Positions 1 through 64,000 of a DNA stretch of 64,000 bases are shown here, piece by piece. The stretch is from NCBI RefSeq assembly GCF_040938485.1, contig NW_027271384.1:3720001-3784000 (forward strand), in the 5' to 3' direction. The DNA comes from Diadema antillarum. Lineage: Eukaryota. Numbering within the stretch: the first letter of the stretch is position 1; each line of letters starts with the position of its first letter. The notes under the pieces are model-generated. The model worked only from the letters and a program-made list of their open reading frames with translations. It was not told where the DNA came from and ran no database searches. The position numbers and the translations under genes are program-made.

Positions 1-56
1 ACCACCGTCGAACATAGTGTAGTGCGGATCTCCCCACACGGTGCAGATTCCAGGCG
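1..56 (-). CDS. Start of module M16 (VWD exon, runs off the window edge)
   Basis: CAG acceptor at 57-59, then [19 protein letters not shown]. Confidence 0.9.
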
Positions 57-3000
57 CTGTTCAGAGAAGCAGTCGGAAGGTAATTAAAGCACTCTGAATA
101 GTGGCAGCCAGAAGCCCTCACTTCTTCTCCCAACAAAATATACAATTGGCCGCCTACACTACAGATGTCTGCCATCTGCCACAAGTAAGCTTAACGTTTC
201 TTTTCACCTCTCGCATTTCTTGCAGACTTCCTTCTATTTTAATTGGTTTCCTCTTTCAAAACAGTACGGTGTTCATCACATACAAAAGTACATGCTCTTT
301 TACCATGCATGACCTGACTGGATCTTGTACTCTAACAGCATAAAAAGAGAACACATGCAAGTACATTTCCACAAAAGAGAGATCACTGGCACTCACAAAT
401 GGAGTCCATACACACCTACCAAACACTATCAAAATCTCTTGCAATATTGTGCTTCTTCAAAATATGAGGTTTCCCGTCTACCTTCAGTTTTTCTTCTCAG
501 ACAAGATGAGCAGTCGACCAAAGGCTTGAAATACACAGCTCAGTAAGGCTCATCGCCGCCCCGCGTTCTCTATCTATTACTCAAATGACTTACCTCTGGT
601 GCATTCTCCATTGCTGTAGGTGAAGCCGTCCCGACAGTAGCAGTCTCTCACACCACCCTTGATCCTACACTCCTGGTTCTCCACGCACGCGTATGCCACA
701 CATTCCAAAGTGCCTCCAGAACAGCTGCACATCTCGGAGCAGTCATCGTTCACGTACACATCCCCTGCCTGTTTGTGCCAATACCAATCATTTAGATTTG
801 CTTTAGACCATGGTCTTCTTTTCAAGCCATTTGCATCTCCATTTGCTTTCAATCCACACGACAATAATCACAGTGTTCAACGATTTATTAAACTTAAGCT
901 CAAATATTACCATCAAAGGAGGAAAGCCACACTCACCGAGATGTAGCTTCCGTCTGGAAGAGTGCAACCACAATCCTCTGGCTGCATGCATGTTCCGCCG
1001 TCGTCCAGCAGTCCTTCGGGGCAGCTGCAGATTTCACGGCAGGGAAGTCCGCAGTTCAGGTCGGCATCTGGATCGGCACAGCTGGGCTGGCAGGCGCTAC
1101 CGCAAGATTCGTACACTGTTCCACTCGGACACTCAAACCCTGAATAAAGACATTTTTTAGGCAAGGATATACCTTGAACGTCATTTACAACGTACAAGAA
1201 CATACAACAAGTGAAATACCCATTCATCACCACGAAAGCTGTACATTACTTACACCGGATACGATCGGCATCACCAAAAACACAAAGTGCTCACACAAGT
1301 CATATAAAGTCAGTACTGTCGTGGACATTCACAACTGTACAGATTTACAGTTTTCACGCAAAATGCACTACCGTCATTCAGCATCTGCACTCTTCTTTCA
1401 TGACTCCACAATATTTCACTTATTTCTTCCAAACCCACCGAAAGACTTTCGACGTCTTTCAAAAGCTGCATCTCATCCTCACGGCACAGAGGGTCATGTC
1501 AGAGACTCTTGACACGCACTTCATGATATCTGATCACATGGCTTTATTTTTTGCACCTCTAGATTCTGATGATCAGCCAAAACAGCTTTCCACTATACAA
1601 CATAAGTGTCATGACACAAAAATACTTACCGCACTGGATTACAGACGCCCTCCAGTCCCCAGCCAAGATGCCATTTGTTTCTCCTCGACACTTCTGAACG
1701 TATTCCTGCAGGGCTCCGCATATGATGTCGTTGTCAGGGTCAGTGAAACACAGGTCGAAGACGCAGGCATCATAGTAATCACTCACGTCCACAAAGTCGG
1801 AGCAGCCTCCCAGGGGACCTGAAAGCAAGAAACAGCTGCAAATATAAGCTCTTGGATACTACACAAACAACAAACAAAAATACACACACAGAAAAAAGAA
1901 AAGAGACTGAGAAATTCCACTGCACTTTTCTATTCGAGGTGATTAGAAATCATCAGACAAATAGTCAGATAGGATGTACCATACTCCAGCTGCTTACCAC
2001 GCTCATTTTCAAATTTGCCCTCTTTTAATGCTTCAATAGATTGCTTTAACTTTTTGCATATCATATCGACTCATCTACTCATAGAATACACGAGTACTGT
2101 AGTGTGCCTCAGTGAAATTCAATCATCTCCATCTTCTCACCGTCAGGATTGATGAAGATGTAGCAGATGTCCTCCACACGTTGCTGCACGTCGGGGTCAT
2201 CACAGCCATCAGGGGGCGGGAGAATTGTGGTATCGCACTCCTCTTCATTCAGAACCCAGTCATTACCAAAGACATTCTGGTACGGTGTCTGCAAACAGGA
2301 CCACATTCGTCAACACAATAATTGGTACTTTTGGGTACAGCTGCACGATCAGGTCACTGTTACATCCACAACACTGATTACATCAAAGTCCAGTCACATG
2401 CGGAACATGTCTCTTTCCTACAATCAAATACCCTGATAGACAGGGTATTGAGAAAGAAGGTAATAAGAGAGCAGAGTTCTACTTACGACACTTCCATCCT
2501 GGAGGCGGAAATCGTTGGATCTGTCGTCATCGAAGGTTCCGCACAGACCACAAGTAGCATTCCAGTACTGGTATGGCACCTCTATGGTTGCAGTGTTGGC
2601 TCCGTCGAAACGTACAGATAGACCAAAGGATGTTTGGATAGTCTGTAATAACGATCAGATATCAGGTCCTGTTTACCCTTCCCCTCATATCGTGCCTTTA
2701 TACTCAATTCTAAAACAATTACGTGTCAAACAAAAATCTTACATCTTGGCATCACGGCTGCAACAAATTTCACTGATATTTCATTTTTGTGTCTCCTTCA
2801 AATAATTGACAATGAAATTGCTTTGACACTAACATAGATGTTAATGCTAGTTTCTCTTTCATTTAATTGTATAAATACTAGTGTGCACCTAATCGATCCA
2901 TCCTTGTAACAAGACACACTTTGGACATTTTAAATGCCCCTACATCAAAATCAATATCAATTGATGTGCTGACCCACAATTGAGTAAACCAGCCATCATT

Positions 3001-6000
3001 CCCTTACCGCGTAAGACCGGTCCGAGCGAATAGTGATGCCGTTGATGAAGCTCAAGGGTGTCGTCCGCCTTGCACCGTTGACTAGAACCACTCTATTCCG
3101 CTCGATCGAATAGCTAGTGCCATTCACCTCTAGTACCACCTTGCGCAGGTACGACACTCGGTCCGATGGGTTGTTCTTGACGTTGTCTCCCCACAAGTGG
3201 AAATCCACAAGGTCCGTGCGGTCGCTGCACGGCCTCACCAGCATGTACTCACAGTCGCCCTGGAAGTCATGACGACCACCGTCGAACATAGTGTAGTGCG
3301 GATCTCCCACACGGTGCAGATTCCAGGCGCTGTTCAGAGAAGCAGTCGGAAGGTAATTAAAGCACTCTGAATAGTGGCAGCCAGAAGCCCTCACTTCTTC
3401 TCCCAACAAAATATACAATTGGCCGCCTACACTACAGATGTCTGCCATCTGCCACAAGTAAGCTTAACGGTTTTTTTCACCTCTCGCATTTCTTGCAGAC
3501 TTCCTTCTATTTTAATTGGTTTCCTCTTTCAAAACAGTACGGTGTTCATCACATACAAAAGTACATGCACAGCATAAAAAGAGAACACATGCAAGTACAT
3601 TTCCACAAAAGAGAGATCACTGGCACTCACAAATGGAGTCCATACACACCTACCAAACACTATCAAAATCTCTTGCAATATTGTGCTTCTTCAAAATATG
3701 AGGTTTCCCGTCTACCTTCAGTTTTTCTTCTCAGACAAGACGACCAAAGGCTTGAAATACACAGCTCAGTAAGGCTCATCGCCGCCCCGCGTTCTCTACA
3801 GTGTATCTATTACTCAAATGACTTACCTCTGGTGCATTCTCCATTGCTGTAGGTGAAGCCGTCCCGACAGTAGCAGTCTCTCACACCACCCTTGATCCTA
3901 CACTCCTGGTTCTCCACGCACGCGTATGCCACACATTCCAAAGTGCCTCCAGAACAGCTGCACATCTCGGAGCAGTCATCGTTCACGTACACATCCCCTG
4001 CCTGTTTGTGCCAATACCAATCATTTAGATTTGCTTTAGACCATGGTCTTCTTTTCAAGCCATTTGCATCTCCATTTGCTTTCAATCCACACGACATTAA
4101 TCACAGTGTTCAACGATTTATTAAACTTAAGCTCAAATATTACCATCAAAGGAGGAAAGCCACACTCACCGAGATGTAGCTTCTGTCTGGAAGAGTGCAA
4201 CCACAATCCTCTGGCTGCACGCATGTTCCGCCGTCGTCCAGCAGTCCTTCGGGGCAGCTGCAGATTTCACGGCAGGGAAGTCCGCAGTTCAGGTCGGCAT
4301 CTGGATCAGCACAGCTGGGCTGGCAGGCGCTACCGCAAGATTCGTACACTGTTCCACTCGGACACTCAAACCCTGAATAAAGACAGTTTTTAGGCAAGGA
4401 TATACCTTGAACGTCATTTACAACGTACAAGAACATACAACAAGTGAAATACCCATTCATCACCACGAAAGCTGTACATTACTTACACCGGATACGATCG
4501 GCATCACCAAAAACACAAAGTGCTCACACAAGTCATATAAAGTCAGTACTGTCGGGGACATTCACAACTGTACAGATTTACAGTTTTCACGCAAAATGCA
4601 CTACCGTCATTCAGCATCTGCACTCTTCTTTCATGACTCCACAATATTTCACTTATTTCTTCCAAACCTACCGAAAGACTTTCGACGTCTTTCAAAAGCT
4701 GCATCTCATCCTCACGGCACAGAGGGTCATGTCAGAGACTCTTGACACGCACTTCATGATATCTGATCACATGGCTTTATTTTTTGCACCTCTAGATTCT
4801 GATGATCAGCCAAAACAGCTTTCCACTATACAACATAAGTGTCATGACACAAAAATACTTACCGCACTGGATTACAGACGCCCTCCAGTCCCCAGCCAAG
4901 ATGCCATTTGTTTCTCCTCGACACTTCTGAACGTATTCCTGCAGGGCTCCGCATATGATGTCGTTGTCAGGGTCAGTGAAACACAGGTCGAAGACGCAGG
5001 CATCATAGTAATCACTCACGTCCACAAAGTCGGAGCAGCCTCCCAGGGGACCTGAAAGCAAGAAACAGCTGCAAATATAAGCTCTTGGATACTACACAAA
5101 CAACAAACAAAAATACACACACAGAAAAAAGAAAAGAGACTGAGAAATTCCACTGCACTTTTCTATTCGAGGTGATTAGAAATCATCAGACAAATAGTCA
5201 GATAGGATGTACCATACTCTAGCTGCTTACCACGCTCATTTTCTAATTTGCCCTCTTTTAATGCTTCAATAGATTGCTTTAACTTTTTGCATATCATATC
5301 GACTCATCTACTCATAGAATACACGAGTACTGTAGTGTGCCTCAGTGAAATTCAATCATCTCCATCTTCTCACCGTCAGGATTGATGAAGATGTAGCAGA
5401 TGTCCTCCACACGTTGCTGCACGTCGGGGTCATCACAGCCATCAGGGGGCGGGAGAATTGTGGTATCGCACTCCTCTTCATTCAGAACCCAGTCATTACC
5501 AAAGACATTCTGGTACGGTGTCTGCAAACAGGACCACATTCGTCAACACAATAATTGGTACTTTTGGGTACAGCTGCACGATCAGGTCACTGTTACATCC
5601 ACAACACTGATTACATCAAAGTCCAGTCACATACGGAACATGTCTCTTTCCTACAATCAAATACCCTGATAGACAGGGTATTGAGAAAGAAGGTAATAAG
5701 AGAGCAGAGTTCTACTTACGACACTTCCATCCTGGAGGCGGAAATCGTTGGATCTGTCGTCATCGAAGGTTCCGCACAGACCACAAGTAGCATTCCAGTA
5801 CTGGTATGGCACCTCTATGGTTGCAGTGTTGGCTCCGTCGAAACGTACAGATAGACCAAAGGATGTTTGGATAGTCTGTAATAACGATCAGATATCAGGT
5901 CCTGTTTACCCTTCCCTTCATATCGTGCCTTTATGCTCAATTCTAAAACAATTACGTGTCAAACAAAAATCTTACATCTTGGCATCACGGCTGCAACAAA

Positions 6001-9000
6001 TTTCACTGATATTTCATTTTCGTGTCTCCTTCAAATATCTGACAATGAAATTGCTTTGACACTAACATAGATGTTAATACTAGTTTCTCTTTCATTTAAT
6101 TGTATAAATACTAGTGTGCACCACATCCTTGTAACAAGACACACTTTGGACATTTTAAATGCCCCTACATCAAAATCAATATCAATTGATGTGCTGACCC
6201 ACAATTGAGTAAACCAGCCATCATTCCCTTACCGCGTAAGACCGGTCCGAGCGAATAGTGATGCCGTTGATGAAGCTCAAGGGTGTCGTCCGCCTTGCAC
6301 CGGTTGGACTAGAACCACTCTATTCCGCTCGATCGAATAGCTAGTGCCATTCACCTCCAGTACCACCTTGCGCAGGTACGACACTCGGTCCGATGGGGTT
6401 GTTCTTGACGTTGTCTCCCCACAAGTGGAAATCCACAAGGTCGTGCGGTCGCTGCACGGCCTCACCAGCGTGTACTCACAGTCGCCCTGGAAGTCATGAC
6501 GACCACGGATCGAACCATTAGTGTAGTGCGGATCTCCCCACACGGTGCAGATTCCAGGCGCTGTTCAGAGAAGCAGTCGGAAGGTAATTAAAGCACTCTG
6601 AATAGTGGCAGCCAGAAGCCCTCACTTCTTCTCCCAACAAAATATACAATTGGCCGCCTACACTACAGATGTCTGCCATCTGCCACAAGTAAGCTTAACG
6701 GTTTTTTTCACCTCTCGCATTTCTTGCAGACTTCCTTCTATTTTAATTGGTTCCTCTTTCAAAACAGTACGGTGTTCATCACATACAAAAGTACATGCTC
6801 TTTACCATGCATGACCTGACTGGATCTTGTACTCTAACAGCATAAAAAGAGAACACATGCAAGTACATTTCCACAAAAGAGAGATCACTGGCACTCACAA
6901 ATGGAGTCCATACACACCTACCAAACACTATCAAAATCTCTTGCAATATTGTGCTTCTTCAAAATATGAGGTTTCCCGTCTACCTTCAGTTTTTCTTCTC
7001 AGACAAGATGAGCAGTCGACCAAAGGCTTGAAATACACAGCTCAGTAAGGCTCATCGCCGCCGCCCGCGTTCTCTATCTATTACTCAAATGACTTACCTC
7101 TGGTGCATTCTCCATTGCTGTAGGTGAAGCCGTCCCGACAGTAGCAGTCTCTCACACCACCCTTGATCCTACACTCCTGGTTCTCCATGCACGCGTATGC
7201 CACACATTCCAAAGTGCCTCCAGAACAGCTGCACATCTCGGAGCAGTCATCGTTCACGTACACATCCCCTGCCTGTTTGTGCCAATACCAATCATTTAGA
7301 TTTGCTTTAGACCATGGTCTTCTTTTCAAGCCATTTGCATCTCCATTTGCTTTCAATCCACACGACAATAATCACAGTGTTCAACGATTTATTAAACTTA
7401 AGCTCAAATATTACCATCAAAGGAGGAAAGCCACACTCACCGAGATGTAGCTTCCGTCTGGAAGAGTGCAACCACAATCCTCTGGCTGCACGCATGTTCC
7501 GCCGTCGTCCAGCAGTCCTTCGGGGCAGCTGCAGATTTCACGGCAGGGAAGTCCGCAGTTCAGGTCGGCATCTGGATCGGCACAGCTGGCTGGCAGGCGC
7601 TACCGCAAGATTCGTACACTGTTCCACTCGGACACTCAAACCCTGAATAAAGACAGTTTTTAGGCAAGGATATACCTTGAACGTCATTTACAACGTACAA
7701 GAACATACAACAAGTGAAATACCCATTCATCACCACGAAAGCTGTACATTACTTACACCGGATACGATCGGCATCACCAAAAACACAAAGTGCTCACACA
7801 AGTCATATAAAGTCAGTACTGTCGGGGACATTCACAACTGTACAGATTTACAGTTTTCACGCAAAATGCACTACCGTCATTCAGCATCTGCACTCTTCTT
7901 TCATGACTCCACAATATTTCACTTATTTCTTCCAAACCCACCGAAAGACTTTCGACGTCTTTCAAAAGCTGCATCTCATCCTCACGGCACAGAGGGTCAT
8001 GTCAGAGACTCTTGACACGCACTTCATGATATCTGATCACATGGCTTTATTTTTTGCACCTCTAGATTCTGATGATCAGCCCAAAACAGCTTTCCCACTA
8101 TACAACATAAGTGTCATGACACAAAAATACTTACCGCACTGGATTACAGACGCCCTCCAGTCCCCAGCCAAGATGCCATTTGTTTCTCCTCGACACTTCT
8201 GAACGTATTCCTGCAGGGCTCCGCATATGATGTCGTTGTCAGGGTCAGTGAAACACAGGTCGAAGACGCAGGCATCATAGTAATCACTCACGTCCACAAA
8301 GTCGAGCAGCCTCCCAGGGGACCTGAAAGCAAGAAACAGCTGCAAATATAAGCTCTTGGATACTACACAAACAACAAACAAAAATACACACACAGAAAAA
8401 AGAAAAGAGACTGAGAAATTCCACTGCACTTTTCTATTCGAGGTGATTAGAAATCATCAGACAAATAGTCAGATAGGATGTACCATACTCTAGCTGCTTA
8501 CCACGCTCATTTTCTAATTTGCCCTCTTTTAATGCTTCAATAGATTGCTTTAACTTTTTGCATATCATATCGACTCATCTACTCATAGAATACACGAGTA
8601 CTGTAGTGTGCCTCAGTGAAATTCAATCATCTCCATCTTCTCACCGTCAGGATTGATGAAGATGTAGCAGATGTCCTCCACACGTTGCTGCACGTCGGGG
8701 TCATCACAGCCATCAGGGGGCGGGAGAATTGTGGTATCGCACTCCTCTTCATTCAGAACCCAGTCATTACCAAAGACATTCTGGTACGGTGTCTGCAAAC
8801 AGGACCACATTCGTCAACACAATTATTGGTACTTTTGGGTACAGCTGCACGATCAGGTCACTGTTACATCCACAACACTGATTACATCAAAGTCCAGTCA
8901 CATGCGGAACATGTCTCTTTCCTACAATCAAATACCCTGATAGACAGGGTATTGAGAAAGAAGGTAATAAGAGAGCAGAGTTCTACTTACGACACTTCCA

Positions 9001-12000
9001 TCCTGGAGGCGGAAATCGTTGGATCTGTCGTCATCGAAGGTTCCGCACAGACCACAAGTAGCATTCCAGTACTGGTATGGCACCTCTATGGTTGCAGTGT
9101 TGGCTCCGTCGAAACGTACAGATAGACCAAAGGATGTTTGGATAGTCTGTAATAACGATCAGATATCAGGTCCTGTTTACCCTTCCCTTCATATCGTGCC
9201 TTTATGCTCAATTCTAAAACAATTACGTGTCAAACAAAAATCTTACATCTTGGCATCACGGCTGCAACAAATTTCACTGATATTTCATTTTCGTGTCTCC
9301 TTCCAAATATCTGACAATGAAATTGCTTTGACACTAACATAGATGTTAATACTAGTTTCTCTTTCATTTAATTGTATAAATACTAGTGTGCACCACATCC
9401 TTGTAACAAGACACACTTTGGACATTTTAAATGCCCCTACATCAAAATCAATATCAATTGATGTGCTGACCCACAATTGAGTAAACCAGCCATCATTCCC
9501 TTACCGCGTAAGACCGGTCCGAGCGAAATAGTGATGCCGTTGATGAAGCTCAAGGGTGTCGTCCGCCTTGCACCGTTGACTAGAACCACTCTATTCCGCT
9601 CGATCGAATAGCTAGTGCCATTCACCTCCAGTACCACCTTGCGCAGGTACGACACTCGGTCCGATGGGTTGTTCTTGACGTTGTCTCCCCACAAGTGGAA
9701 ATCCACAAGGTCCGTGCGGTCGCTGCACGGCCTCACCAGCGTGTACTCACAGTCGCCCTGGAAGTCATGACGACCACCGTCGAACATAGTGTAGTGCGGA
9801 TCTCCCCACACGGTGCAGATTCCAGGCGCTGTTCAGAGAAGCAGTCGGAAGGTAATTAAAGCACTCTGAATAGTGGCAGCCAGAAGCCCTCACTTCTTCT
9901 CCCAACAAAATATACAATTGGCCGCCTACACTACAGATGTCTGCCATCTGCCACAAGTAAGCTTAACGGTTTTTTTCACCTCTCGCATTTCTTGCAGACT
10001 TCCTTCTATTTTAATTGGTTTCCTCTTTCAAAACAGTACGGTGTTCATCACATACAAAAGTACATGCTCTTTTACCATGCATGACCTGACTGGATCTTGT
10101 ACTCTAACAGCATAAAAAGAGAACACATGCAAGTACATTTCCACAAAAGAGAGATCACTGGCACTCACAAATGGAGTCCATACACACCTACCAAACACTA
10201 TCAAAATCTCTTGCAATATTGTGCTTCTTCAAAATATGAGGTTTCCCGTCTACCTTCAGTTTTTCTTCTCAGACAAGATGAGCAGTCGACCAAAGGCTTG
10301 AAATACACAGCTCAGTAAGGCTCATCGCCGCCCCGCGTTCTCTATCTATTACTCAAATGACTTACCTCTGGTGCATTCTCCATTGCTGTAGGTGAAGCCG
10401 TCCCGACAGTAGCAGTCTCTCACACCACCCTTGATCCTACACTCCTGGTTCTCCACGCACGCGTATGCCACACATTCCAAAGTGCCTCCAGAACAGCTGC
10501 ACATCTCGGAGCAGTCATCGTTCACGTACACATCCCCTGCCTGTTTGTGCCAATACCAATCATTTAGATTTGCTTTAGACCATGGTCTTCTTTTCAAGCC
10601 ATTTGCATCTCCATTTGCTTTCAATCCACACGACAATAATCACAGTGTTCAACGATTTATTAAACTTAAGCTCAAATATTACCATCAAAGGAGGAAAGCC
10701 ACACTCACCGAGATGTAGCTTCCGTCTGGAAGAGTGCAACCACAATCCTCTGGCTGCACGCATGTTCCGCCGTCGTCCAGCAGTCCTTCGGGGCAGCTGC
10801 AGATTTCACGGCAGGGAAGTCCGCAGTTCAGGTCGGCATCTGGATCGGCACAGCTGGGCTGGCAGGCGCTACCGCAAGATTCGTACACTGTTCCACTCGG
10901 ACACTCAAACCCTGAATAAAGACAGTTTTTAGGCAAGGATATACCTTGAACGTCATTTACAACGTACAAGAACATACAACAAGTGAAATACCCATTCATC
11001 ACCACGAAAGCTGTACATTACTTACACCGGATACGATCGGCATCACCAAAAACACAAAGTGCTCACACAAGTCATATAAAGTCAGTACTGTCGGGGACAT
11101 TCACAACTGTACAGATTTACAGTTTTCACGCAAAATGCACTACCGTCATTCAGCATCTGCACTCTTCTTTCATGACTCCACAATATTTCACTTATTTCTT
11201 CCAAACCCACCGAAAGACTTTCGACGTCTTTCAAAAGCTGCATCTCATCCTCACGGCACAGAGGGTCATGTCAGAGACTCTTGACACGCACTTCATGATA
11301 TCTGATCACATGGCTTTATTTTTTGCACCTCTAGATTCTGATGATCAGCCAAAACAGCTTTCCACTATACAACATAAGTGTCATGACACAAAAATACTTA
11401 CCGCACTGGATTACAGACGCCCTCCAGTCCCCAGCCAAGATGCCATTTGTTTCTCCTCGACACTTCTGAACGTATTCCTGCAGGGCTCCGCATATGATGT
11501 CGTTGTCAGGGTCAGTGAAACACAGGTCGAAGACGCAGGCATCATAGTAATCACTCACGTCCACAAAGTCGGAGCAGCCTCCCAGGGGACCTGAAAGCAA
11601 GAAACAGCTGCAAATATAAGCTCTTGGATACTACACAAACAACAAACAAAAATACACACACAGAAAAAAGAAAAGAGACTGAGAAATTCCACTGCACTTT
11701 TCTATTCGAGGTGATTAGAAATCATCAGACAAATAGTCAGATAGGATGTACCATACTCTAGCTGCTTACCACGCTCATTTTCTAATTTGCCCTCTTTTAA
11801 TGCTTCAATAGATTGCTTTAACTTTTTGCATATCATATCGACTCATCTACTCATAGAATACACGAGTACTGTAGTGTGCCTCAGTGAAATTCAATCATCT
11901 CCATCTTCTCACCGTCAGGATTGATGAAGATGTAGCAGATGTCCTCCACACGTTGCTGCACGTCGGGGTCATCACAGCCATCAGGGGGCGGGAGAATTGT

Positions 12001-30000: not shown

Positions 30001-33000
30001 ATTGCTGTAGGTGAAGCCGTCCCGACAGTAGCAGTCTCTCACACCACCCTTGATCCTACACTCCTGGTTCTCCACGCACGCGTATGCCACACATTCCAAA
30101 GTGCCTCCAGAACAGCTGCACATCTCGGAGCAGTCATCGTTCACGTACACATCCCCTGCCTGTTTGTGCCAATACCAATCATTTAGATTTGCTTTAGACC
30201 ATGGTCTTCTTTTCAAGCCATTTGCATCTCCATTTGCTTTCAATCCACACGACAATAATCACAGTGTTCAACGATTTATTAAACTTAAGCTCAAATATTA
30301 CCATCAAAGGAGGAAAGCCACACTCACCGAGATGTAGCTTCCGTCTGGAAGAGTGCAACCACAATCCTCTGGCTGCACGCATGTTCCGCCGTCGTCCAGC
30401 AGTCCTTCGGGGCAGCTGCAGATTTCACGGCAGGGAAGTCCGCAGTTCAGGTCGGCATCTGGATCGGCACAGCTGGGCTGGCAGGCGCTACCGCAAGATT
30501 CGTACACTGTTCCACTCGGACACTCAAACCCTGAATAAAGACATTTTTTAGGCAAGGATATACCTTGAACGTCATTTACAACGTACAAGAACATACAACA
30601 AGTGAAATACCCATTCATCACCACGAAAGCTGTACATTACTTACACCGGATACGATCGGCATCACCAAAAACACAAAGTGCTCACACAAGTCATATAAAG
30701 TCAGTACTGTCGTGGACATTCACAACTGTACAGATTTACAGTTTTCACGCAAAATGCACTACCGTCATTCAGCATCTGCACTCTTCTTTCATGACTCCAC
30801 AATATTTCACTTATTTCTTCCAAACCCACCGAAAGACTTTCGACGTCTTTCAAAAGCTGCATCTCATCCTCACGGCACAGAGGGTCATGTCAGAGACTCT
30901 TGACACGCACTTCATGATATCTGATCACATGGCTTTATTTTTTGCACCTCTAGATTCTGATGATCAGCCAAAACAGCTTTCCACTATACAACATAAGTGT
31001 CATGACACAAAAATACTTACCGCACTGGATTACAGACGCCCTCCAGTCCCCAGCCAAGATGCCATTTGTTTCTCCTCGACACTTCTGAACGTATTCCTGC
31101 AGGGCTCCGCATATGATGTCGTTGTCAGGGTCAGTGAAACACAGGTCGAAGACGCAGGCATCATAGTAATCACTCACGTCCACAAAGTCGGAGCAGCCTC
31201 CCAGGGGACCTGAAAGCAAGAAACAGCTGCAAATATAAGCTCTTGGATACTACACAAACAACAAACAAAAATACACACACAGAAAAAAGAAAAGAGACTG
31301 AGAAATTCCACTGCACTTTTCTATTCGAGGTGATTAGAAATCATCAGACAAATAGTCAGATAGGATGTACCATACTCTAGCTGCTTACCACGCTCATTTT
31401 CTAATTTGCCCTCTTTTAATGCTTCAATAGATTGCTTTAACTTTTTGCATATCATATCGACTCATCTACTCATAGAATACACGAGTACTGTAGTGTGCCT
31501 CAGTGAAATTCAATCATCTCCATCTTCTCACCGTCAGGATTGATGAAGATGTAGCAGATGTCCTCCACACGTTGCTGCACGTCGGGGTCATCACAGCCAT
31601 CAGGGGGCGGGAGAATTGTGGTATCGCACTCCTCTTCATTCAGAACCCAGTCATTACCAAAGACATTCTGGTACGGTGTCTGCAAACAGGACCACATTCG
31701 TCAACACAATAATTGGTACTTTTGGGTACAGCTGCACGATCAGGTCACTGTTACATCCACAACACTGATTACATCAAAGTCCAGTCACATGCGGAACATG
31801 TCTCTTTCCTACAATCAAATACCCTGATAGACAGGGTATTGAGAAAGAAGGTAATAAGAGAGCAGAGTTCTACTTACGACACTTCCATCCTGGAGGCGGA
31901 AATCGTTGGATCTGTCGTCATCGAAGGTTCCGCACAGACCACAAGTAGCATTCCAGTACTGGTATGGCACCTCTATGGTTGCAGTGTTGGCTCCGTCGAA
32001 ACGTACAGATAGACCAAAGGATGTTTGGATAGTCTGTAATAACGATCAGATATCAGGTCCTGTTTACCCTTCCCTTCATATCGTGCCTTTATGCTCAATT
32101 CTAAAACAATTACGTGTCAAACAAAAATCTTACATCTTGGCATCACGGCTGCAACAAATTTCACTGATATTTCATTTTCGTGTCTCCTTCAAATATCTGA
32201 CAATGAAATTGCTTTGACACTAACATAGATGTTAATACTAGTTTCTCTTTCATTTAATTGTATAAATACTAGTGTGCACCTAATCGATCCATCCTTGTAA
32301 CAAGACACACTTTGGACATTTTAAATGCCCCTACATCAAAATCAATATCAATTGATGTGCTGACCCACAATTGAGTAAACCAGCCATCATTCCCTTACCG
32401 CGTAAGACCGGTCCGAGCGAATAGTGATGCCGTTGATGAAGCTCAAGGGTGTCGTCCGCCTTGCACCGTTGACTAGAACCACTCTATTCCGCTCGATCGA
32501 ATAGCTAGTGCCATTCACCTCCAGTACCACCTTGCGCAGGTACGACACTCGGTCCGATGGGTTGTTCTTGACGTTGTCTCCCCACAAGTGGAAATCCACA
32601 AGGTCCGTGCGGTCGCTGCACGGCCTCACCAGCGTGTACTCACAGTCGCCCTGGAAGTCATGACGACCACCGTCGAACATAGTGTAGTGCGGATCTCCCC
32701 ACACGGTGCAGATTCCAGGCGCTGTTCAGAGAAGCAGTCGGAAGGTAATTAAAGCACTCTGAATAGTGGCAGCCAGAAGCCCTCACTTCTTCTCCCAACA
32801 AAATATACAATTGGCCGCCTACACTACAGGTGTCTGCCATCTGCCACAAGTAAGCTTAACGGTTTTTTTCACCTCTCGCATTTCTTGCAGACTTCCTTCT
32901 ATTTTAATTGGTTTCCTCTTTCAAAACAGTACGGTGTTCATCACATACAAAAGTACATGCTCTTTTACCATGCATGACCTGACTGGATCTTGTACTCTAA

Positions 33001-36000
33001 CAGCATAAAAAGAGAACACATGCAAGTACATTTCCACAAAAGAGAGATCACTGGCACTCACAAATGGAGTCCATACACACCTACCAAACACTATCAAAAT
33101 CTCTTGCAATATTGTGCTTCTTCAAAATATGAGGTTTCCCGTCTACCTTCAGTTTTTCTTCTCAGACAAGATGAGCAGTCGACCAAAGGCTTGAAATACA
33201 CAGCTCAGTAAGGCTCATCGCCGCCCCGCGTTCTCTACAGTGTATCTATTACTCAAATGACTTACCTCTGGTGCATTCTCCATTGCTGTAGGTGAAGCCG
33301 TCCCGACAGTAGCAGTCTCTCACACCACCCTTGATCCTACACTCCTGGTTCTCCACGCACGCGTATGCCACACATTCCAAAGTGCCTCCAGAACAGCTGC
33401 ACATCTCGGAGCAGTCATCGTTCACGTACACATCCCCTGCCTGTTTGTGCCAATACCAATCATTAAGATTTGCTTTAGACCATGGTCTTCTTTTCAAGCC
33501 ATTTGCATCTCCATTTGCTTTCAATCCACACGACAATAATCACAGTGTTCAACGATTTATTAAACTTAAGCTCAAATATTACCATCAAAGGAGGAAAGCC
33601 ACACTCACCGAGATGTAGCTTCCGTCTGGAAGAGTGCAACCACAATCCTCTGGCTGCACGCATGTTCCGCCGTCGTCCAGCAGTCCTTCGGGGCAGCTGC
33701 AGATTTCACGGCAGGGAAGTCCGCAGTTCAGGTCGGCATCTGGATCGGCACAGCTGGGCTGGCAGGCGCTACCGCAAGATTCGTACACTGTTCCACTCGG
33801 ACACTCAAACCCTGAATAAAGACAGTTTTTAGGCAAGGATATACCTTGAACGTCATTTACAACATACAAGAACATACAACAAGTGAAATACCCATTCATC
33901 ACCACGAAAGCTGTACATTACTTACACCAGATACGATCGGCATCACCCAAAACACAAAGCGCTCACAGGAGGCACATCAAGTCAGTACTGTCGTGGACAT
34001 CCACAGCTGTACAGATTTACATTTTTCACACAAAATGCACTACCGTCATTCAGCATCTGCACTCTTCTTTCATGACTCCACAATATTTCACTTATTTCTT
34101 CCAAACCCACCGAAAGACTTTCGACGTCTTTCAAAAGCTGCATCTCATCCTCCCGGCACAGAGGGTCATGTCAGAGACTCTTGACACGCACTTCATGATA
34201 TCTGATCACATGGCTTTATTTTTTGCACCTCTAGATTCTGATGATCAGCCAAAACAGCTTTCCACTATACAACATAAGTGTCATGACACAAAAATACTTA
34301 CCGCACTGGATTACAGACGCCCTCCAGTCCCCAGCCAAGATGCCATTTGTTTCTCCTCGACACTTCTGAACGTATTCCTGCAGGGCTCCGCATATGATGT
34401 CGTTGTCAGGGTCAGTGAAACACAGGTCGAAGACGCAGGCATCATAGTAATCACTCACGTCCACAAAGTCGGAGCAGCCTCCCAGGGGACCTGAAAGCAA
34501 GAAACAGCTGCAAATATAAGCTCTTGGATACTACACAAACAACAAACAAAAATACACACACAGAAAAAAGAAAAGAGACTGAGAAATTCCACTGCACTTT
34601 TCTATTCGAGGTGACTAGAAATCATCAGACAAATAGTCAGATAGGATGTACCATACTCTAGCTGCTTACCACGCTCATTTTCTAATTTGCCCTCTTTTAA
34701 TGCTTCAATAGATTGCTTTAACTTTTTGCATATCATATCGACTCATCTACTCATAGAATACACGAGTACTGTAGTGTGCCTCAGTGAAATTCAATCATCT
34801 CCATCTTCTCACCGTCAGGATTGATGAAGATGTAGCAGATGTCCTCCACACGTTGCTGCACGTCGGGGTCATCACAGCCATCAGGGGGCGGGAGAATTGT
34901 GGTATCGCACTCCTCTTCATTCAGAACCCAGTCATTACCAAAGACATTCTGGTACGGTGTCTGCAAACAGGACCACATTCGTCAACACAATAATTGGTAC
35001 TTTTGGGTACAGCTGCACGATCAGGTCACTGTTACATCCACAACACTGATTACATCAAAGTCCAGTCACATGCGGAACATGTCTCTTTCCTACAATCAAA
35101 TACCCTGATAGACAGGGTATTGAGAAAGAAGGTAATAAGAGAGCAGAGTTCTACTTACGACACTTCCATCCTGGAGGCGGAAATCGTTGGATCTGTCGTC
35201 ATCGAAGGTTCCGCACAGACCACAAGTAGCATTCCAGTACTGGTATGGCACCTCTATGGTTGCAGTGTTGGCTCCGTCGAAACGTACAGATAGACCAAAG
35301 GATGTTTGGATAGTCTGTAATAACGATCAGATATCAGGTCCTGTTTACCCTTCCCTTCATATCGTGCCTTTATGCTCAATTCTAAAACAATTACGTGTCA
35401 AACAAAAATCTTACATCTTGGCATCACGGCTGCAACAAATTTCACTGGTATTTCATTTTCGTGTCTCCTTCAAATATCTGACAATGAAATTGCTTTGACA
35501 CTAACATAGATGTTAATACTAGTTTCTCTTTCATTTAATTGTATAAATACTAGTGTGCACCTAATCGATCCATCCTTGTAACAAGACACACTTTGGACAT
35601 TTTAAATGCCCCTACATCAAAATCAATATCAATTGATGTGCTGACCCACAATTGAGTAAACCAGCCATCATTCCCTTACCGCGTAAGACCGGTCCGAGCG
35701 AATAGTGATGCCGTTGATGAAGCTCAAGGGTGTCGTCCGCCTTGCACCGTTGACTAGAACCACTCTATTCCGCTCGATCGAATAGCTAGTGCCATTCACC
35801 TCCAGTACCACCTTGCGCAGGTACGACACTCGGTCCGATGGGTTGTTCTTGACGTTGTCTCCCCACAAGTGGAAATCCACAAGGTCCGTGCGGTCGCTGC
35901 ACGGCCTCACCAGCGTGTACTCACAGTCGCCCTGGAAGTCATGACGACCACCATCGAACATAGTGTAGTGTGGATCTCCCCACACGGTGCAGATTCCAGG

Positions 36001-39000
36001 CGCTGTTCAGAGAAGCAGTCGGAAGGTAATTAAAGCACTCTGAATAGTGGCAGCCAGAAGCCCTCACTTCTTCTCCCAACAAAATACACAATTGGCCGCC
36101 TACACTACAGATGTCTGCCATCTGCCACAAGTAAGCTTAACGGTTTTTTTCACCTCTCGCATTTCTTGCAGACTTCCTTCTATTTTAATTGGTTTCCTCT
36201 TTCAAAACAGTACGGTGTTCATCACATACAAAAGTACATGCTCTTTTACCATGCATGACCTGACTGGATCTTGTACTCTAACAGCATAAAAAGAGAACAC
36301 ATGCAAGTACATTTCTACAAAAGAGAGATCACTGGCACTCACAAATGGAGTCCATACACACCTACCAAACACTATCAAAGTCTCTTGCAATATTGTGCCT
36401 CTTCTAAATATGAGGTTTCACGTCTACCTTCAGTTTTTCTTCTCAGACAAGATGAGCGGTCGACCAAAGGCTTGAAATACACCGCACAGCAAGGCTCATC
36501 GCCGGCCCGCGTTCTCTATCTACTAGTCAAACGACTTACCTCTGGTGCACTCTCCATTGCTGTAGGTGAAGCCGTCCCGACAGTAGCAGTCTCTCACACC
36601 ACCCTTGATCCTACACTCCTGGTTCTCCACGCACCCGTATGCCACACATTCCAAAGTGCCTCCAGAACAGCTGCACATCTCGGAGCAGTCATCGTTCACG
36701 TACACATCTCCTGCCTGTTTGTGCCAATACCAATCATTTAGATTTGCTTTAGACCATGGTCTTCTTTTCAAGCCATTTGCATCTCCATTTCCTTTCAATC
36801 CACACGACAATAATCACAGTCTTCAACGTTTTATTAAACTTAGGCTCAAAGATTACCATCAAAAGGAGGAAAGCCACACTCACCGAGATGTAGCTTCCGT
36901 CTGGAAGAGTGCAACCACAATCCTCCGGCTGCACGCATGTTCCACCGTCGTCCAGCAGTCCTTCAGGGCACCTGCAGATTTCACGGCAGGGAAGTCCGCA
37001 GTTCAGGTCGGCATCTGGATCGGCACAGCTGGGCTGGCAGGCGCTACCGCAAGATTCGTACACTGTTCCAGTCGGACACTCAAACCCTGAATAAAGACAA
37101 TTTTTAGGCAAGGATATACCTTGAACGTCATTTACAACGTACAAGAACATACAACAAGTGAAATACCCATTCATCACCACGAAAGGTGTACATTACTTAC
37201 ACTGGATACGATCGGCATTACCCAAAACACAAAGTGCTCACACAAGTCATATAAAGTCAGTACTGTCGGGGACATTCACAACTGTACAGATTTACAGTTT
37301 TCACGCAAAATGCACTACCGTCATTCAGCATCCACACTCTTCTTTCATGACTCCACAATATTTCACTTATTTCTTCCAAACCCACCGACCGACTTTCGAC
37401 GTCTTTCAAAAGTTGCATCTCATCCTCACGGCACAGAGGGTCATGTCAGAGACTCTTGACACGCACTTCATGATATCTGATCACATGGCTTTATTTTTTG
37501 CACCTCTAGATTCTGATGATCAGCCAAAACAGCTTTACACTATACAACATAAGTGTCATGACACAAAAATACTTACCGCACTGGATTACAGACGCCCTCC
37601 AGTCCCCAGCCAAGATGCCATTTGTTTCTCCTCGACACTTCTGAACGTATTCCTGCAGGGCTCCGCATATGATGTTGTTGTCAGGGTCAGTGAAACACAG
37701 GTCGAAGACGCAGGCATCATAGTAAATCACTCACGTCCACAAAGTCCGAGCAGCCTCCCAGGGGACCTGAAAGCAAGAAACAGCTGCAAATATAAGCTCT
37801 TGGATATACATAAACACAAACAAAAATACACACACAGAAAAAAGAAAAGAGACTGAGAAATTCACTGCACTTTTCTGATCGAGGCGATTAGAAATCATCA
37901 GACAAATCGTCAGATAGGATGTCCCATACTCTAGCTGCTTACCACGCTCATTTTCTAACTTGCCCTCTTTTAATGCTTCAATAGATTGCTTTAACTTTTT
38001 GCATATCATATCGACTCACTACTCATAGAATACACGAGTACTGTAGTGTGCCTCAGTGAAATTCAATCATCTCCATCTTCTCACCGTCAGGATTGATGAA
38101 GATGTAGCAGATGTCCTCCACACGTTGCCGCACGTCGGGGTCATCAGCCATCAGGGGGCGGGAGAATTGTGGTATCACACTCCTCTTCATTCAGAACCCA
38201 GTCATTACCAAAGACATTCTGGTACGGTGTCTGCAAACAGGACCACATTCGTCAACACAATAATTGGTACTTTTGGGTAAAGATGCACGATCAGGTCACT
38301 GTTACATCCATAACACTGATTACGTCAAAGTCCAGTCACATGCGGAACATGTCTCTTTCCTACAATCGGATACCCTGATAGACAGGGTATTGAGAAAGGG
38401 AGTAAAAAGAGAGCAGAGTTCTACTTACGACACTTCCATCCTGGAGGCGGAAATCGTTGGATCTGTCGTCATCGAAGGTTCCGCAGAGACCACAAGTAGC
38501 ATTCCAGTACTGGTATTGCACCTCTATGGTTGCAGTGTTGGCTCCGTCGAAACGTACAGATAGACCAAAGGATGTTTGGATAGTCTGTAATAACGATCAG
38601 ATATCAGGTCCTGTTTACCCTTCCCTTCATATTGTGCCTTTATGCTCAATTCTAAAACAATACGTGTCAAACAAAAAATCTTACATCTTGGCATCACGGC
38701 TGCAACAAATTTCACTCATATTTCATTTTCATGTCTCCTTCAAATATCTGACAATGAAATTACTTGACACTAACATAGATGTTAATACTAGTTTCTCTTT
38801 TTTTTTATTGTATAAATATTAGTGTGCACCTAATCGATCCATCCTCGTAACGGGATACACTTCGGACATTTTAAATGCCCCTACATCAAAATCAATATCA
38901 ATTGATGTGCTGACCCACAATTTGGGAGGCTTTCAAGACTAACGAGTAAACCAGCTATTATTCCTTTACCGCGTACGACCGGTCCGAGCGAATAGTGACG

Positions 39001-40113
39001 CCGTTGATGAAGCTCAAGGGTGTCGTCCTCCTTGCACCGTTGACTAGAACCACTCTATTCCGCTCGATCGAATAGCTAGTGCCATTCACCTCCAGTACCA
39101 CCTTGCGCAGGTACGACACTCGGTCCGATGGATTGTTCTTGATGTTGTCTCCCCAAAGGTGGAAATCCACAAGGTCAGCGCGATCGCTGCACGGCCTCAC
39201 CAGCGTGTACTCACAGTCGCCCTGGAAGTCGTGACGACCACCGTCGAACATAGTGTAGTGAGGGTCTCCCCACACGGTGCAGATTCCAGGTGCTGTTCAG
39301 AGAGGCAGTTGGAATGTAAAGCAATTTCCACAGATGCACACACAAGCACTCGCTGCTTCTCACGGCAAAATATACAATTGGCCGCTTACACTAAAGAAGT
39401 ATTCTACCCGTCACAAGCAAACTTAAGGAGTTTTTTTACCTGTCATAATTGTAGACTTCCCTATTTCTTTTTTTCTTCATTCAAAACAGAAAGGTGTTCA
39501 TCTGGGCCCCATTTCATAAAAGAGGTTAGGATGGCAACTCTTGCTGGAATGGCGCAACTTCCAATAGCAACAGCATATCAGGAAGCTGGATTCTTGTCGT
39601 TACCATGACAATTGCCATTCCAGCAAGAGTTATTATCTTATCAACCTTTTATGGAATGGGGCCCAGATAGTGTGCAATGCTCTTTTAACAAGCATGACCT
39701 GACTGGGTCAGTACTCGTAACAGCATAAAAAGAGAGATCACAGGCAGAGTACTCTCCACTTTATTGGGTACTGCTTAGCTTGTAATTGATTTACAAGCTA
39801 AAAGAGAGTTCCCCATGCATGAAGTATTTTCCAGATAATCACATAGATATTCCATATAAACATGTAGGAATTTTACAGAATAACCTGATCTATTTCTATA
39901 GTTTAATGTAGAGAACCTTTAGAATTTGTGTAAATATAAATTTTGAAGAAATTGTTAGGTGCTGAGAGTTGATACACAGCTTAGTTTCACATTCTAACAT
40001 GTCAAATGTGCAGTATACAACTGATTTGCTGTATCACTGATACAAGTAGATGCAGTTTTGCATTTGTATCTTTTATACGAAAGCTTGCACTAGCACCAAA
40101 CACACTTCCAACA

Positions 40114-40169
<56 letters not shown>

Positions 40170-48000: not shown

Positions 48001-48041
<41 letters not shown>

Positions 48042-51000: not shown

Positions 51001-52220
51001 ATGCAGCCAAAACCGGGGCAAGTTTATCCCCTGAGCTATCCCATAATGCATCTAAAATGCTGCTCTGCGCACGGCACCTATAGGCACTGGCAATACCGAG
51101 GGTTCACGAAAGTCTCACTCTGCAAATGTTCCTGGTCTTACAGTACATACCACATTCGGAGACTTCTGATCTCCAGTCTCCAAGGTCAACGCCCTCTTGA
51201 TAACAGCTCGAGACATATTCCTGGATGTAGTCGCAGACGTCGAAAACTGGCCCGATGGCGCAGTAGTCATAGAGGCAGTCCTCGTAGGTGTCTCGGGGAT
51301 AGACAAAGTCAAAGCAGTCTGACAGAGGACCTGAAACCATGAGGAGACAAATGAAGGATATGGTTTACAGCAACATGCTAGGATGAACATCTGATGAACT
51401 GTGGGGTACCATCATAGCCCCGGAATACAGCATTGCATAGCACCACCTCGTGTTTGATAGATGGACAGTTTTTATAAACAGTGCCACCATGATGGCCAAA
51501 TTCTAGCACTTGGTGATGATTGCCCATTCTCACCCGACGGACTGTGATATCACAATGGTGACACTCAGCAAATTGATCTGCGGAATCGGCACAAGCACCA
51601 AACTGGCAACAATACAATCAACAGCTGATCAGCCAAACAAAATGTTAGATCAATCAATTGAACATAAATACATCTTTTAAACGCAGCATCAAACTTCCCT
51701 GAATTCTTACACTTGAAAGAAAGGTGTTGATTCAAAGAGCTGCAAATAGTTATTGCAAGAATAGATAGGTTGCTTGGATTTGAAAGTGAGGTGTGTTGAA
51801 ATATGAAACAAAGCGGGTGATCAATCTAGCCTACTTACCATCAGGGTGACTGAATATATAGCATACATCAAGCGCTTCCTCCAGAAGATCACCAGTGCAT
51901 TCTCCTGGCTGTGGAGATTCTCCGTTACAGCTTTCAGGGTTAACGACCCAACTGTTTGCGAACACCGTCAAGAACTGAGTCTAAAGGGACACAAAACAGA
52001 GAACATCAATGCCGACAAAATAGTCTCGGCTGTCTCACTCAATCTCATCTGAGGTAAACATTACACTACTCAATGGAAGACCCTTGGATTTACGATGTAA
52101 TAGCCCTGATGTACTTTGGAAGATGTAGGTAGATGCTTCAATTGTTTGTACCAGCTGGCACAGGGGAATGTCCATATGTATGAAAAACGGATAATCCAAG
52201 AGGTCTATAAACTTAATGTA

Positions 52221-52269
<49 letters not shown>

Positions 52270-63935: not shown

Positions 63936-64000
63936 CTGGAATGAGAAAGCGTAAAATTTTACAGCTGAAGGTCAAGGGTAATTCAAGGTTCATTTCACAT

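What the first reader, a model, noticed from the sequence alone, without database searches (positions are those of the whole stretch)
1..39292. LPA-KIV2-like intragenic exon-array: at least 12 near-identical 3.27-kb six-exon cassettes, each adding a 398-aa VWD-C8-TIL-TILa module
Seen: the repeat unit is a whole exon-intron block, not a coding minisatellite. Copies M5-M15 differ by only a handful of substitutions, in introns as well as exons, and the array continues past the window edge. Known: human FCGBP has 13 VWDs, and the LPA KIV-2 array varies in copy number and so in protein size. Inference: this gene is undergoing very recent or ongoing amplification and concerted evolution. It reaches at least 16 VWD modules (>6,300 aa) and probably segregates as protein-length alleles in ~398-aa steps, a tunable-length mucus or adhesive scaffold. 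I cannot tell whether it has been described in this species.
Basis: partly seen in the sequence, partly recalled or inferred. Interest (0 to 1): 0.85.

Follow-up and report, generated by a model that had tools for sequence, protein, structure and literature searches.

The report
Giant sea-urchin FCGBP-like exon-cassette array
A long-spined sea urchin gene of the mucus/adhesive FCGBP family contains dozens of almost identical 3.3-kb six-exon blocks that each add one 398-residue module; the array is real and recently homogenised, but its exact copy number, intact reading frame, expression and variation between animals are not yet shown.

Summary
Window 1-39,292 carries, on the minus strand, 12 tandem 3.27-kb cassettes of six GT-AG exons totalling 1,194 nt (398 aa, VWD-C8-TIL-TILa). 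M5-M15 differ by 0-34 substitutions per unit.

The window is Diadema antillarum JBFRCO010000496.1:3,720,001-3,784,000. Stitching neighbouring pieces gives a 230-kb locus with 46 GDPHY modules on one strand. It holds three internally homogeneous arrays: 15 type A, 13 type B and about 10 type C. Overlapping windows of this scan had noted parts of it.

- As assembled, only M5-M12 are in frame. M4 and M13-M15 carry frame-breaking indels, mostly homopolymer-type. They look like assembly errors (ONT-patched assembly; M4 dN/dS 0.15).
- Contig depth in three runs confirms a multi-copy array, at 6-14 times the flank. In the likely source animal this is only about half the assembled count.
- Sea-star, crinoid and sea-cucumber orthologues also have near-identical module runs, and human FCGBP and mouse zonadhesin are precedents.

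Concerted evolution is supported. Protein-length alleles and expression remain untested. Verdict: a real, large new member of a known kind.

The parts
57..36002 (-). Eleven type-A cassettes M15..M5 (unit starts at 3329, 6560, 9828, 13094, 16368, 19642, 22907, 26173, 29447, 32721, 36002). Each has six exons and codes a 398-aa VWD-C8-TIL-TILa module.
1..56 (-). Start of exon 1 of cassette M16. The array continues past the window edge: M16-M19 follow in the record.
9829..13094 (-). Reference cassette M12. Exons: 13094-12772, 12414-12259, 12060-11913, 11590-11402, 10911-10709, 10540-10366.
   Evidence: all AG/GT, 1,194 nt; Pfam
10366..36002 (-). M5-M12: the eight consecutive cassettes that are in frame as assembled (8 x 1,194 nt, no stops).
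36003..39292 (-). Boundary cassette M4, 2.8% substitutions from type A, carrying the 21-nt intron insertion typical of type B. Its frame is broken as assembled: 2 nt missing in exon 3 near 38146 (gives TGA) and 1 extra T in exon 4 at 37726.
3308..9828 (-). Error-rich stretch covering M13, M14 and the start of M15. It has about 15 short private indels, mostly homopolymer-length changes and seven of them inside exons, plus a few longer ones. It is probably a long-read (ONT) patch.
   Evidence: assembly method
33786..34085 (-). Patch in intron 4 of M5 that is type-B-like (97.7% to B, 95.3% to other A units). It is either a conversion tract or a retained ancestral segment.
40796..45002 (-). Module M3, 74-95% amino-acid identity to the array module by exon.
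47110..53836 (-). Module M2, diverged (about 30-67% amino-acid identity).
54711..59639 (-). Module M1, diverged (about 42-57% amino-acid identity).
61720..63999 (-). Three EGF-like exons upstream of M1 (61863-61720, within 62952-62698, within 63999-63637). The gene continues upstream beyond the window; RefSeq model XP P0171 runs to 3.2 kb from the contig end.

Best explanation
The window is the 5'-central part of one very large Diadema antillarum gene. That gene is the orthologue of the echinoderm 'IgGFc-binding protein-like' proteins, which have an EGF-rich N-terminus followed by a long run of VWD-C8-TIL-TILa assemblies.

Its central modules are each encoded by a six-exon, phase-1/phase-1 cassette, so any number of cassettes splices in frame. 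Unequal crossing-over and gene conversion between cassettes have repeatedly amplified and homogenised them. This produced three sub-arrays in the locus: type A (15 assembled, 11 in this window), type B (13) and type C (about 10). Each is internally 99-100% alike. Types A and B are 5% apart, and type C shares only about 49% amino-acid identity with A in the VWD exon.

Type A is the youngest. It is sister to the adjacent single-copy module M4.

Shown:
- the architecture;
- the in-frame design of the cassette;
- purifying selection on the exons;
- the multi-copy state in three independent read sets;
- species-specific fixed array variants.

Inferred:
- that the frame-breaking indels in M4 and M13-M15 are assembly or polishing errors;
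- that the whole run is one transcript;
- that the product is a GDPH-self-cleaving extracellular mucus or adhesive scaffold.
For: Architecture
- Period, exon structure and frame. Domains.
- Exact placement in GCA_040938485.1.
- Stitched 229,667-nt locus with no conflicts, and 46 GDPHY plus 46 CGxCG motifs on one strand.

Concerted evolution
- Within-array distances are 0-34 substitutions per 3.27 kb for A and 1-13 per 3.31 kb with no indels for B. C units differ by 2-42 substitutions.
- A-B distance is 5.2%, M4-A 2.8% and M4-B 5.1%.
- The organism-B run carries a TGCA insertion and a 21-nt insertion at full array depth (521/521). Organism-A contigs laid there lack them.
- M5 holds a B-like patch.

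Selection
- A versus B: exons 2.4%, introns 6.8%, dN 0.013, dS 0.067.
- M4 versus A: dN 0.011, dS 0.071, no cysteine lost.

Reality of the array
- Array contigs versus adjacent single-copy contigs: 205-434 against 27-31 in X1, 45-100 against 8.4 in X2, 412-521 against 38-41 in X3.
- Metagenome contigs about one unit long are 99.3% and 97.2% identical to type B.

Error origin of the frameshifts
- They are mostly homopolymer-length changes clustered in M13-M15.
- The assembly was patched with ONT contigs and polished with low-coverage Illumina reads.
- All B units are indel-free.

Orthology
- P0171 has the same GDPH spacing (556, 832, about 397) as the Patiria and Antedon proteins. Those proteins also hold runs of 97-99.5% identical modules.
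Against: - As deposited, the frame is broken at M4, before the array, and again in M13-M15. The M4 indels lie in a unique, otherwise clean region and could not be checked, because Logan contigs drop the low-depth M4-specific branches.
- No RNA run was shown to hold the sequence, and the one candidate (X11) proved to be genomic DNA.
- RefSeq splits the run into at least 12 gene models, so a single transcript is not documented.
- In the likely source individual, A-specific contigs are about 7-8 times and A+B exon contigs about 12-14 times the two-copy flank. That is about half of the 15 and 28 assembled units.
- M13-M17 almost duplicate M8-M12 (7, 4, 2, 0 and 5 substitutions) and begin with the noisy stretch. 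Mean HiFi read length was only 6.8 kb.
- Function is inferred from family membership only.
Confidence: 0.65

Rival explanations
1. The array is real but the assembled copy number is inflated. Either the 5-unit block M13-M17 is a false tandem copy of M8-M12 created when HiFi contig ends were joined with an ONT patch, or both haplotypes' arrays were laid end to end. The true type-A number would then be about 7-10 per haplotype.
For: - The 5-unit offset block has only 7, 4, 2, 0 and 5 substitutions, and the indel noise is confined to M13-M15.
- The assembly used RagTag patching with ONT contigs, a mean HiFi read of 6.8 kb, and totals 1.73 Gb against a 0.70-Gb haploid estimate.
- X1 depth is 205-250 for A-specific introns and 358-434 for exons shared with B, against 27-31 for the flank. 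That is about half of what 15 A and 28 A+B units on both haplotypes would give.
- X2 shows the same 1:2 pattern.
- No second haplotig of the locus appears among the D. antillarum proteins found.
Against: - Assemblers usually collapse rather than expand near-identical tandem repeats.
- The depth deficit applies equally to B, whose 13 units show no block duplication and no noise. This points to normalisation or haplotype differences rather than one local artefact.
- Contig word depth is a rough measure, and the tool itself warns it is no copy number.
Confidence: 0.4
2. M4's frameshifts are real. Translation from the upstream start then ends in M4, and the near-identical cassettes downstream are an untranslated, decaying or separately expressed remnant.
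For: - M4 lacks 2 nt in exon 3, giving an immediate TGA, and has 1 extra nt in exon 4. Skipping exon 3 does not rescue the frame (own translation).
- RefSeq ends one model in M4 and starts another after the break.
Against: - M4 versus A has dN/dS 0.15 with all cysteines kept.
- A versus B has dN/dS about 0.2, with exons 2.8 times more conserved than introns.
- M5-M12, all B units and the RefSeq C modules are open.
- Every one of the 46 modules keeps GDPHY and CGxCG. Such conservation is not expected downstream of an old stop.
Confidence: 0.12
3. Types A and B are the two allelic versions of one array, one per haplotype, wrongly concatenated in the contig.
For: In X1 the A-specific depth and the A+B exon depth equal 14.6 and 29 single-haplotype copies. 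That is exactly the content of the one assembled contig.
Against: - A second individual from another study (X2) shows the same 1:2 A to A+B ratio.
- The A-to-B junction is in register inside one cassette (M19), at an 8.6-kb insertion in intron 3, not at an array start.
- M5 carries a B-type patch.
- 5% divergence is twice the genome-wide heterozygosity.
Confidence: 0.07

Closest known systems
Echinoderm 'IgGFc-binding protein-like' giants (Patiria miniata 6,632 aa, Antedon mediterranea 7,500 aa, Holothuria leucospilota 6,755 aa; NCBI models)
   Same: - They share the N-terminal plan: EGF repeats, then two VWDs spaced about 555 and 830 residues, then about 395-aa VWD-C8-TIL-TILa modules.
- They are 42-45% identical to the Diadema models.
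- Each contains a run of near-identical modules: 99% in Patiria, 97-99.5% in Antedon, 84-94% in Holothuria.
   Different: - Diadema has at least 46 modules in the locus, against 10-17 GDPH motifs in the other models.
- Diadema has three separate homogenised sub-arrays.
- Its 3' end (mucin, FN3 and transmembrane region in Patiria) was not reached here.
- The other species were compared as protein models only, not at the DNA level.
Human FCGBP (13 VWD assemblies; D3-D11 are three repeats of a three-assembly unit; PMC8267560)
   Same: - The same domain unit (VWD-C8-TIL) with GDPH autocleavage motifs.
- An intragenic segmental repeat lengthens the protein relative to mouse (7 VWDs).
   Different: - The vertebrate repeat unit is three assemblies copied three times. 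Here it is single assemblies copied 10-15 times in each of three arrays.
- About 33% identity only.
- EGF N-terminus instead of the FCGBP N-domain.
- GDPH cleavage, mucus location and IgG binding were not tested here.
Mouse zonadhesin D3p array (20 partial VWD domains, each a two-exon cassette; 9-24 among muroid rodents; PMC9275260)
   Same: A tandem exon-cassette array of VWD-type modules inside one gene, with lineage-specific copy number and rapid evolution.
   Different: - D3p are partial domains in two-exon cassettes. Here the cassettes are complete four-domain assemblies in six exons.
- Zan has MAM and mucin domains and acts in sperm-egg adhesion. No such domains or role are seen here.
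Human LPA kringle IV-2 array
   Same: A multi-exon cassette repeated in tandem and in frame, near-identical including introns. In LPA, copy number sets protein size.
   Different: - An unrelated domain, with a 5.5-kb two-exon unit.
- The defining feature of LPA, population copy-number polymorphism giving size isoforms, is not shown here.
[quoted passage not shown]
   Same: Large echinoderm secreted proteins combining EGF, VWD, C8 and TIL domains. Sfp1 is cleaved after translation into disulfide-linked subunits.
   Different: - Sfp1 has discoidin and galactose-binding lectin domains that are not seen here.
- No expression data link this gene to tube feet.
- Orthology was not tested.

Membership tests
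FCGBP-like / VWD-assembly concatemer proteins | Serial VWD-C8-TIL(-TILa) assemblies | tested here: met
   Pfam VWD 3.5e-35, C8 3.8e-13, TIL 4e-13, TILa 5e-11 on the spliced 398-aa module. There are 46 such modules in the stitched locus.
FCGBP-like / VWD-assembly concatemer proteins | GDPH autocleavage motif and CGLCG motif in the VWDs | tested here: met
   46 of 46 modules have GDPHY, and there are 46 CGxCG motifs. This shows the motifs are present; cleavage itself was not tested.
FCGBP-like / VWD-assembly concatemer proteins | Sequence relatives are annotated FCGBP, zonadhesin or tectorin rather than gel-forming mucins or VWF | tested here: met
   Best hits are echinoderm and vertebrate IgGFc-binding protein-like and zonadhesin-like proteins (30-45% identity). 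Mucins and VWF score far lower at 25-27%.
Echinoderm orthologue group (Patiria, Antedon, Holothuria IgGFc-binding protein-like) | N-terminal EGF repeats plus two widely spaced VWDs, followed by a run of about 395-aa modules | tested here: met
   GDPH spacings are 556, 832, 397 for P0171, 554, 830, 400 for Patiria and 599, 838, 396 for Antedon. EGF-like exons lie at 61.7-64 kb.
Echinoderm orthologue group (Patiria, Antedon, Holothuria IgGFc-binding protein-like) | C-terminal mucin-like region, FN3 repeats and transmembrane tail (as in the Patiria model) | not tested
   The fetched locus ends at record 3,603,646, still inside VWD modules.
LPA KIV-2-type coding copy-number array | Tandem multi-exon cassette, in frame, near-identical in exons and introns | tested here: met
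LPA KIV-2-type coding copy-number array | Copy number differs between individuals | tested here: inconclusive
   A-specific contig to flank ratios are about 7.3 (X1) and 5.7 (X2). The organism-B array gives about 10-13. Contig word depth and one or two flank contigs per run cannot resolve real differences.
LPA KIV-2-type coding copy-number array | Transcripts and proteins of matching different sizes | not testable with these tools
   No RNA run was found to hold the stretch.
Zonadhesin | MAM domains and a mucin domain before the VWDs; sperm expression | tested here: not met
   The Pfam lists of the Diadema models show EGF-type domains and no MAM. Expression is unknown.
Gel-forming mucins | D1-D2-D'D3, a central PTS region, D4, and C-terminal VWC/CTCK | tested here: not met
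   No PTS region or CTCK is seen in the 230 kb examined, and similarity to MUC2/MUC5 is only 25-27%. The 3' end was not reached.

The most novel reading that the evidence does not exclude
The whole 230-kb run is one gene encoding a protein of more than 18,000 aa with at least 46 VWD assemblies that self-cleaves at GDPH. That would be several times more VWDs than any described protein.

Its three homogenised cassette arrays would differ strongly in length between haplotypes. In the source animal, array depth equals only one assembled haplotype's worth. The species would then carry protein-length alleles in 398-aa steps.

The same central array has been kept near-identical independently in sea stars, crinoids and sea cucumbers. 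This would point to long-standing selection for module identity, not just recent duplication.
Probability: 0.2. Interest if true: 0.75.

Novelty: new member of a known kind. Interest (0 to 1): 0.52.

Why it matters
- If the gene is intact, Diadema antillarum makes one of the largest extracellular proteins known. It would be built from about 38 near-identical cassettes and offer a natural system for studying how unequal exchange tunes the length of a mucus or adhesive scaffold.
- The species is a keystone reef grazer hit by mass mortalities, so surface-barrier proteins are of practical interest.
- There is a technical lesson. The reference assembly and its RefSeq annotation handle this locus poorly: frameshifts in a patched stretch, at least 12 fragment 'genes', and an uncertain copy number. 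Counts of 'zonadhesin-like' or 'FCGBP-like' genes in this genome are inflated as a result.
- The recurrence of near-identical module runs in orthologues from four echinoderm classes suggests a general property of this gene. I found no description of it in the papers searched.

Tried and rejected
- Tandem Repeats Finder misses the array because its longest period is 500. Self-BLAST was used instead.
- RNA evidence: the single run search was made with kind 'any' and returned only Logan contigs. The one small run chosen as a possible transcriptome (X11) contains introns and an Illumina adapter, so it is DNA. No splice joints were seen.
- Testing M4's frameshifts with reads failed. At M4-specific sites nearly all laid contigs are the high-depth array type, because contig assembly drops the roughly 30x M4 branches.
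- I tested whether skipping M4 exon 3 (which restores length modulo 3) rescues the frame. It does not: exon 4 read in that phase hits TGA after 11 codons (own translation of the sequence).
- I first thought L001 (92.5% identical) was an orthologue from another species or a paralogue. The coordinates of the earlier insertion note, and then exact overlap, showed it is the same contig 16 kb downstream.
- Searches of earlier findings by words and by sequence gave nothing, and negative coordinates are not accepted.
- The representative-protein search only showed that the family is huge (3,882 hits) and gave no close long relative.
- No structure prediction was run. The domains are unambiguous by sequence.
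Full report
**1. The observation**

Self-BLAST of a 3.5-kb probe finds 12 head-to-tail copies from position 1 to 39,502, with a period of 3,265-3,290 bp. Eleven are 98.8-99.97% identical and the last (36,175-39,502) is 94.5%. TRF cannot see the array because its period limit is 500.

Negative GC skew and the ORF list place the gene on the minus strand. In the reference unit M12 the six exons are 13094-12772, 12414-12259, 12060-11913, 11590-11402, 10911-10709 and 10540-10366. All have AG/GT borders. They total 1,194 nt and enter and leave in phase 1, so any number of units splices in frame. The 398-aa product scores VWD, C8, TIL and TILa in Pfam.

**2.

Extracting all 72 exons shows that only M5-M12 are open.
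- M4 lacks 2 nt in exon 3 (TGTG to TG near 38,146), which creates an immediate TGA. It also has an extra T in exon 4 at 37,726.
- M13 has three 1-nt indels.
- M14 has a dense cluster in exon 1.
- M15 has lost one G of a GGGG run.

Most are homopolymer-length changes. M13 and M14 also carry private 1-nt indels in their introns, whereas M5-M12 differ from one another by only 0-3 indel events.

Among M5-M15 there are 133 variable columns: 56 substitutions and 77 indel columns. 23 of the substitutions and 24 of the indel columns are shared between units, so they mark real unit types.

**3. Where the window is**

The best protein hit was a 479-aa 'zonadhesin-like' fragment model from Diadema antillarum. 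Its locus L001 holds a second array with period 3,310 that is 92.5% identical to the window's.

That matched the end of the non-array sequence in L001 to within 1-2 nt, if the window starts at 3,720,001 of JBFRCO010000496.1. A further locus then overlapped the window over 35,043 nt with no mismatch.

Five fetched pieces plus the window stitch without conflict into 229,667 nt, record 3,603,646-3,833,312.

**4. The whole locus**

All 46 GDPHY and 46 CGxCG motifs are on the gene strand. In order the locus contains:
- two N-terminal VWDs among EGF exons;
- M1-M4;
- 15 type-A cassettes (M5-M19, 3.27 kb);
- an 8.6-kb insertion in intron 3 of M19;
- 13 type-B cassettes, each exactly 3,310 bp;
- a transition;
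- about 10 type-C cassettes (3.30 kb, 392-aa modules);
- two more modules, with the run continuing beyond the fetched DNA.

RefSeq cuts this into at least 12 models: 2,918, 443, 1,435, 190, 141, 1,886, 408, 479, 1,443, 389, 548, 408, 4,904 and 974+ aa. Some start at an ATG inside an intron and read through a donor. Where they are spliced, they use the junctions I predicted.

**5. Homogeneity and its history**

- Type-A units differ by 0-34 substitutions.
- Type-B units differ by 1-13 substitutions with no indel.
- Type-C units differ by 2-42 substitutions.
- Genome heterozygosity of this assembly is given as 2.52%, so cassettes are far more alike than typical alleles.
- M4-A differ by 2.8%, M4-B by 5.1% and A-B by 5.2%. 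At three-way informative sites B is the odd one out 122 times, against 45 and 44. Type A is therefore sister to M4 and was amplified or homogenised long after that split.
- M5 carries a 170-bp intron patch of B type.

Purifying selection is clear:
- A versus B: exons 2.4%, introns 6.8%, dN 0.013, dS 0.067.
- M4 versus A: dN 0.011, dS 0.071, with every cysteine kept.

This makes an old, real break at M4 unlikely.

**6. Reads**

Only Logan contigs were available. Depths were as follows.

| Run | Adjacent single-copy contigs | A-specific intron contigs | Exon contigs |
|---|---|---|---|
| X1 (organism A, probably the assembly's animal) | 26.5-30.7 (0-1 mismatch) | 205-250 | 358-434 |
| X2 (same species label, other study) | 8.4 | 45-58 | 87-100 |
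| X3 (organism B, flank 2-4% diverged) | 38-41 | single array type, 412-521 | (same type) |

- In X1 the exon contigs carry the type-B letter at 35,893, so they are shared with B.
- X3's single array type carries B's 21-nt insertion and a private TGCA insertion at full depth.
- The array is therefore real and multi-copy in every run, so the '1-3 copies' refutation fails.
- Species-specific fixed variants across all copies are direct evidence of concerted evolution.
- Two marine metagenome contigs of about one unit length are 99.3% and 97.2% identical to type B. Type B is thus the widespread form and type A the derived one.

**7. The copy-number caveat**

Against a two-copy flank, X1 gives about 7-8 type-A and about 12-14 A+B units per haploid genome. 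That is about half of the 15 and 28 assembled.
- M13-M17 nearly repeat M8-M12 (7, 4, 2, 0 and 5 substitutions). This block starts with the only noisy stretch.
- The assembly paper describes hifiasm on 6.8-kb HiFi reads, RagTag patching with ONT contigs, Illumina polishing and a 1.73-Gb total for a 0.70-Gb haploid estimate.
- Three readings remain open: the arrays are over-expanded, the second haplotype is much shorter, or the depth normalisation is off. Contig word depth cannot decide.
- The similar ratios in X1, X2 and X3 give no evidence for or against length polymorphism.

**8. Comparison with what is known**

The Diadema 5' model has the same GDPH spacing (556, 832, about 397) as the giant 'IgGFc-binding protein-like' proteins of Patiria miniata, Antedon mediterranea and Holothuria leucospilota. 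Each of these also holds a run of near-identical modules: 99%, 97-99.5% and 84-94%.

Human FCGBP's D3-D11 are three copies of a three-assembly unit (PMC8267560). Mouse zonadhesin has 20 D3p two-exon cassettes, numbering 9-24 among muroids (PMC9275260). VWD/C8/TIL/EGF proteins are candidate tube-foot adhesives in sea urchins and sea stars (PMC7037938).

The kind is therefore known. This case stands out by its size and by having three separately homogenised arrays. I found no paper describing it in Diadema.

**9. Verdict**

The finding is a real and striking intragenic cassette array in a conserved echinoderm FCGBP-like gene, shaped by recent unequal exchange and conversion under purifying selection. 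The continuous giant ORF, the exact copy number, expression and protein-length alleles remain unproven. The deposited sequence and annotation of this locus contain probable errors.

Noticed in passing
window 39422-39823 and 40226-40627: Two stretches in the M3-M4 intron have contig depth of 16,000-41,000 in three DNA runs. They are a very high-copy interspersed repeat, probably a MITE or other transposon.
   Followed up: no
window 63188-63629: A 157-bp tandem repeat (2.9 copies, 88% match). Similar sequence (86-92%) recurs in the B-to-C transition of the same locus (L002:18611-19578).
   Followed up: partly
window 40005-40207, 47928-48150, 52216-52412: (GT/CA)n microsatellites in introns, read on the minus strand as poly-(Cys-Val) ORFs.
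   Followed up: no
record JBFRCO010000496.1 about 3,700,384-3,708,971 (L004 / L001:1-3573): An 8.6-kb non-array insertion in intron 3 of cassette M19, exactly at the switch from type-A to type-B units. I confirmed only its size (spacing 11,895 against 3,307) and position.
   Followed up: partly
record 3,603,646-3,833,312 (L001-L005): RefSeq annotation splits one same-strand run of 46 modules into at least 12 'genes' named zonadhesin-like, alpha-tectorin-like, IgGFc-binding protein-like and mucin-2-like. Some start at an intronic ATG. Gene counts for this family in the genome are inflated.
   Followed up: yes
L002:about 31800-58200 (stitched locus 190,951-217,376): A third homogeneous array, type C: period about 3,297-3,343 bp, 392-aa modules that are 99.7-100% identical at protein level in XP_071498829.
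   Followed up: partly
L006 (Tara metagenome scaffold, 3,290 nt) and L008 (ENA metagenome node, 3,258 nt): Reef or ocean metagenome assemblies contain Diadema-type cassettes as contigs of about one repeat length. These are environmental animal DNA collapsed on the tandem unit.
   Followed up: partly
window 3568, 3740, 3805 (M14 3' intron): M14 has a private 39-bp deletion. It also has an 8-bp deletion shared only with M9 and a 7-bp insertion also carried by M5 and M9, in the intron before M15. M14 is thus only 3,231 bp. Whether the private deletion is real or part of the noisy patch is not known.
   Followed up: no
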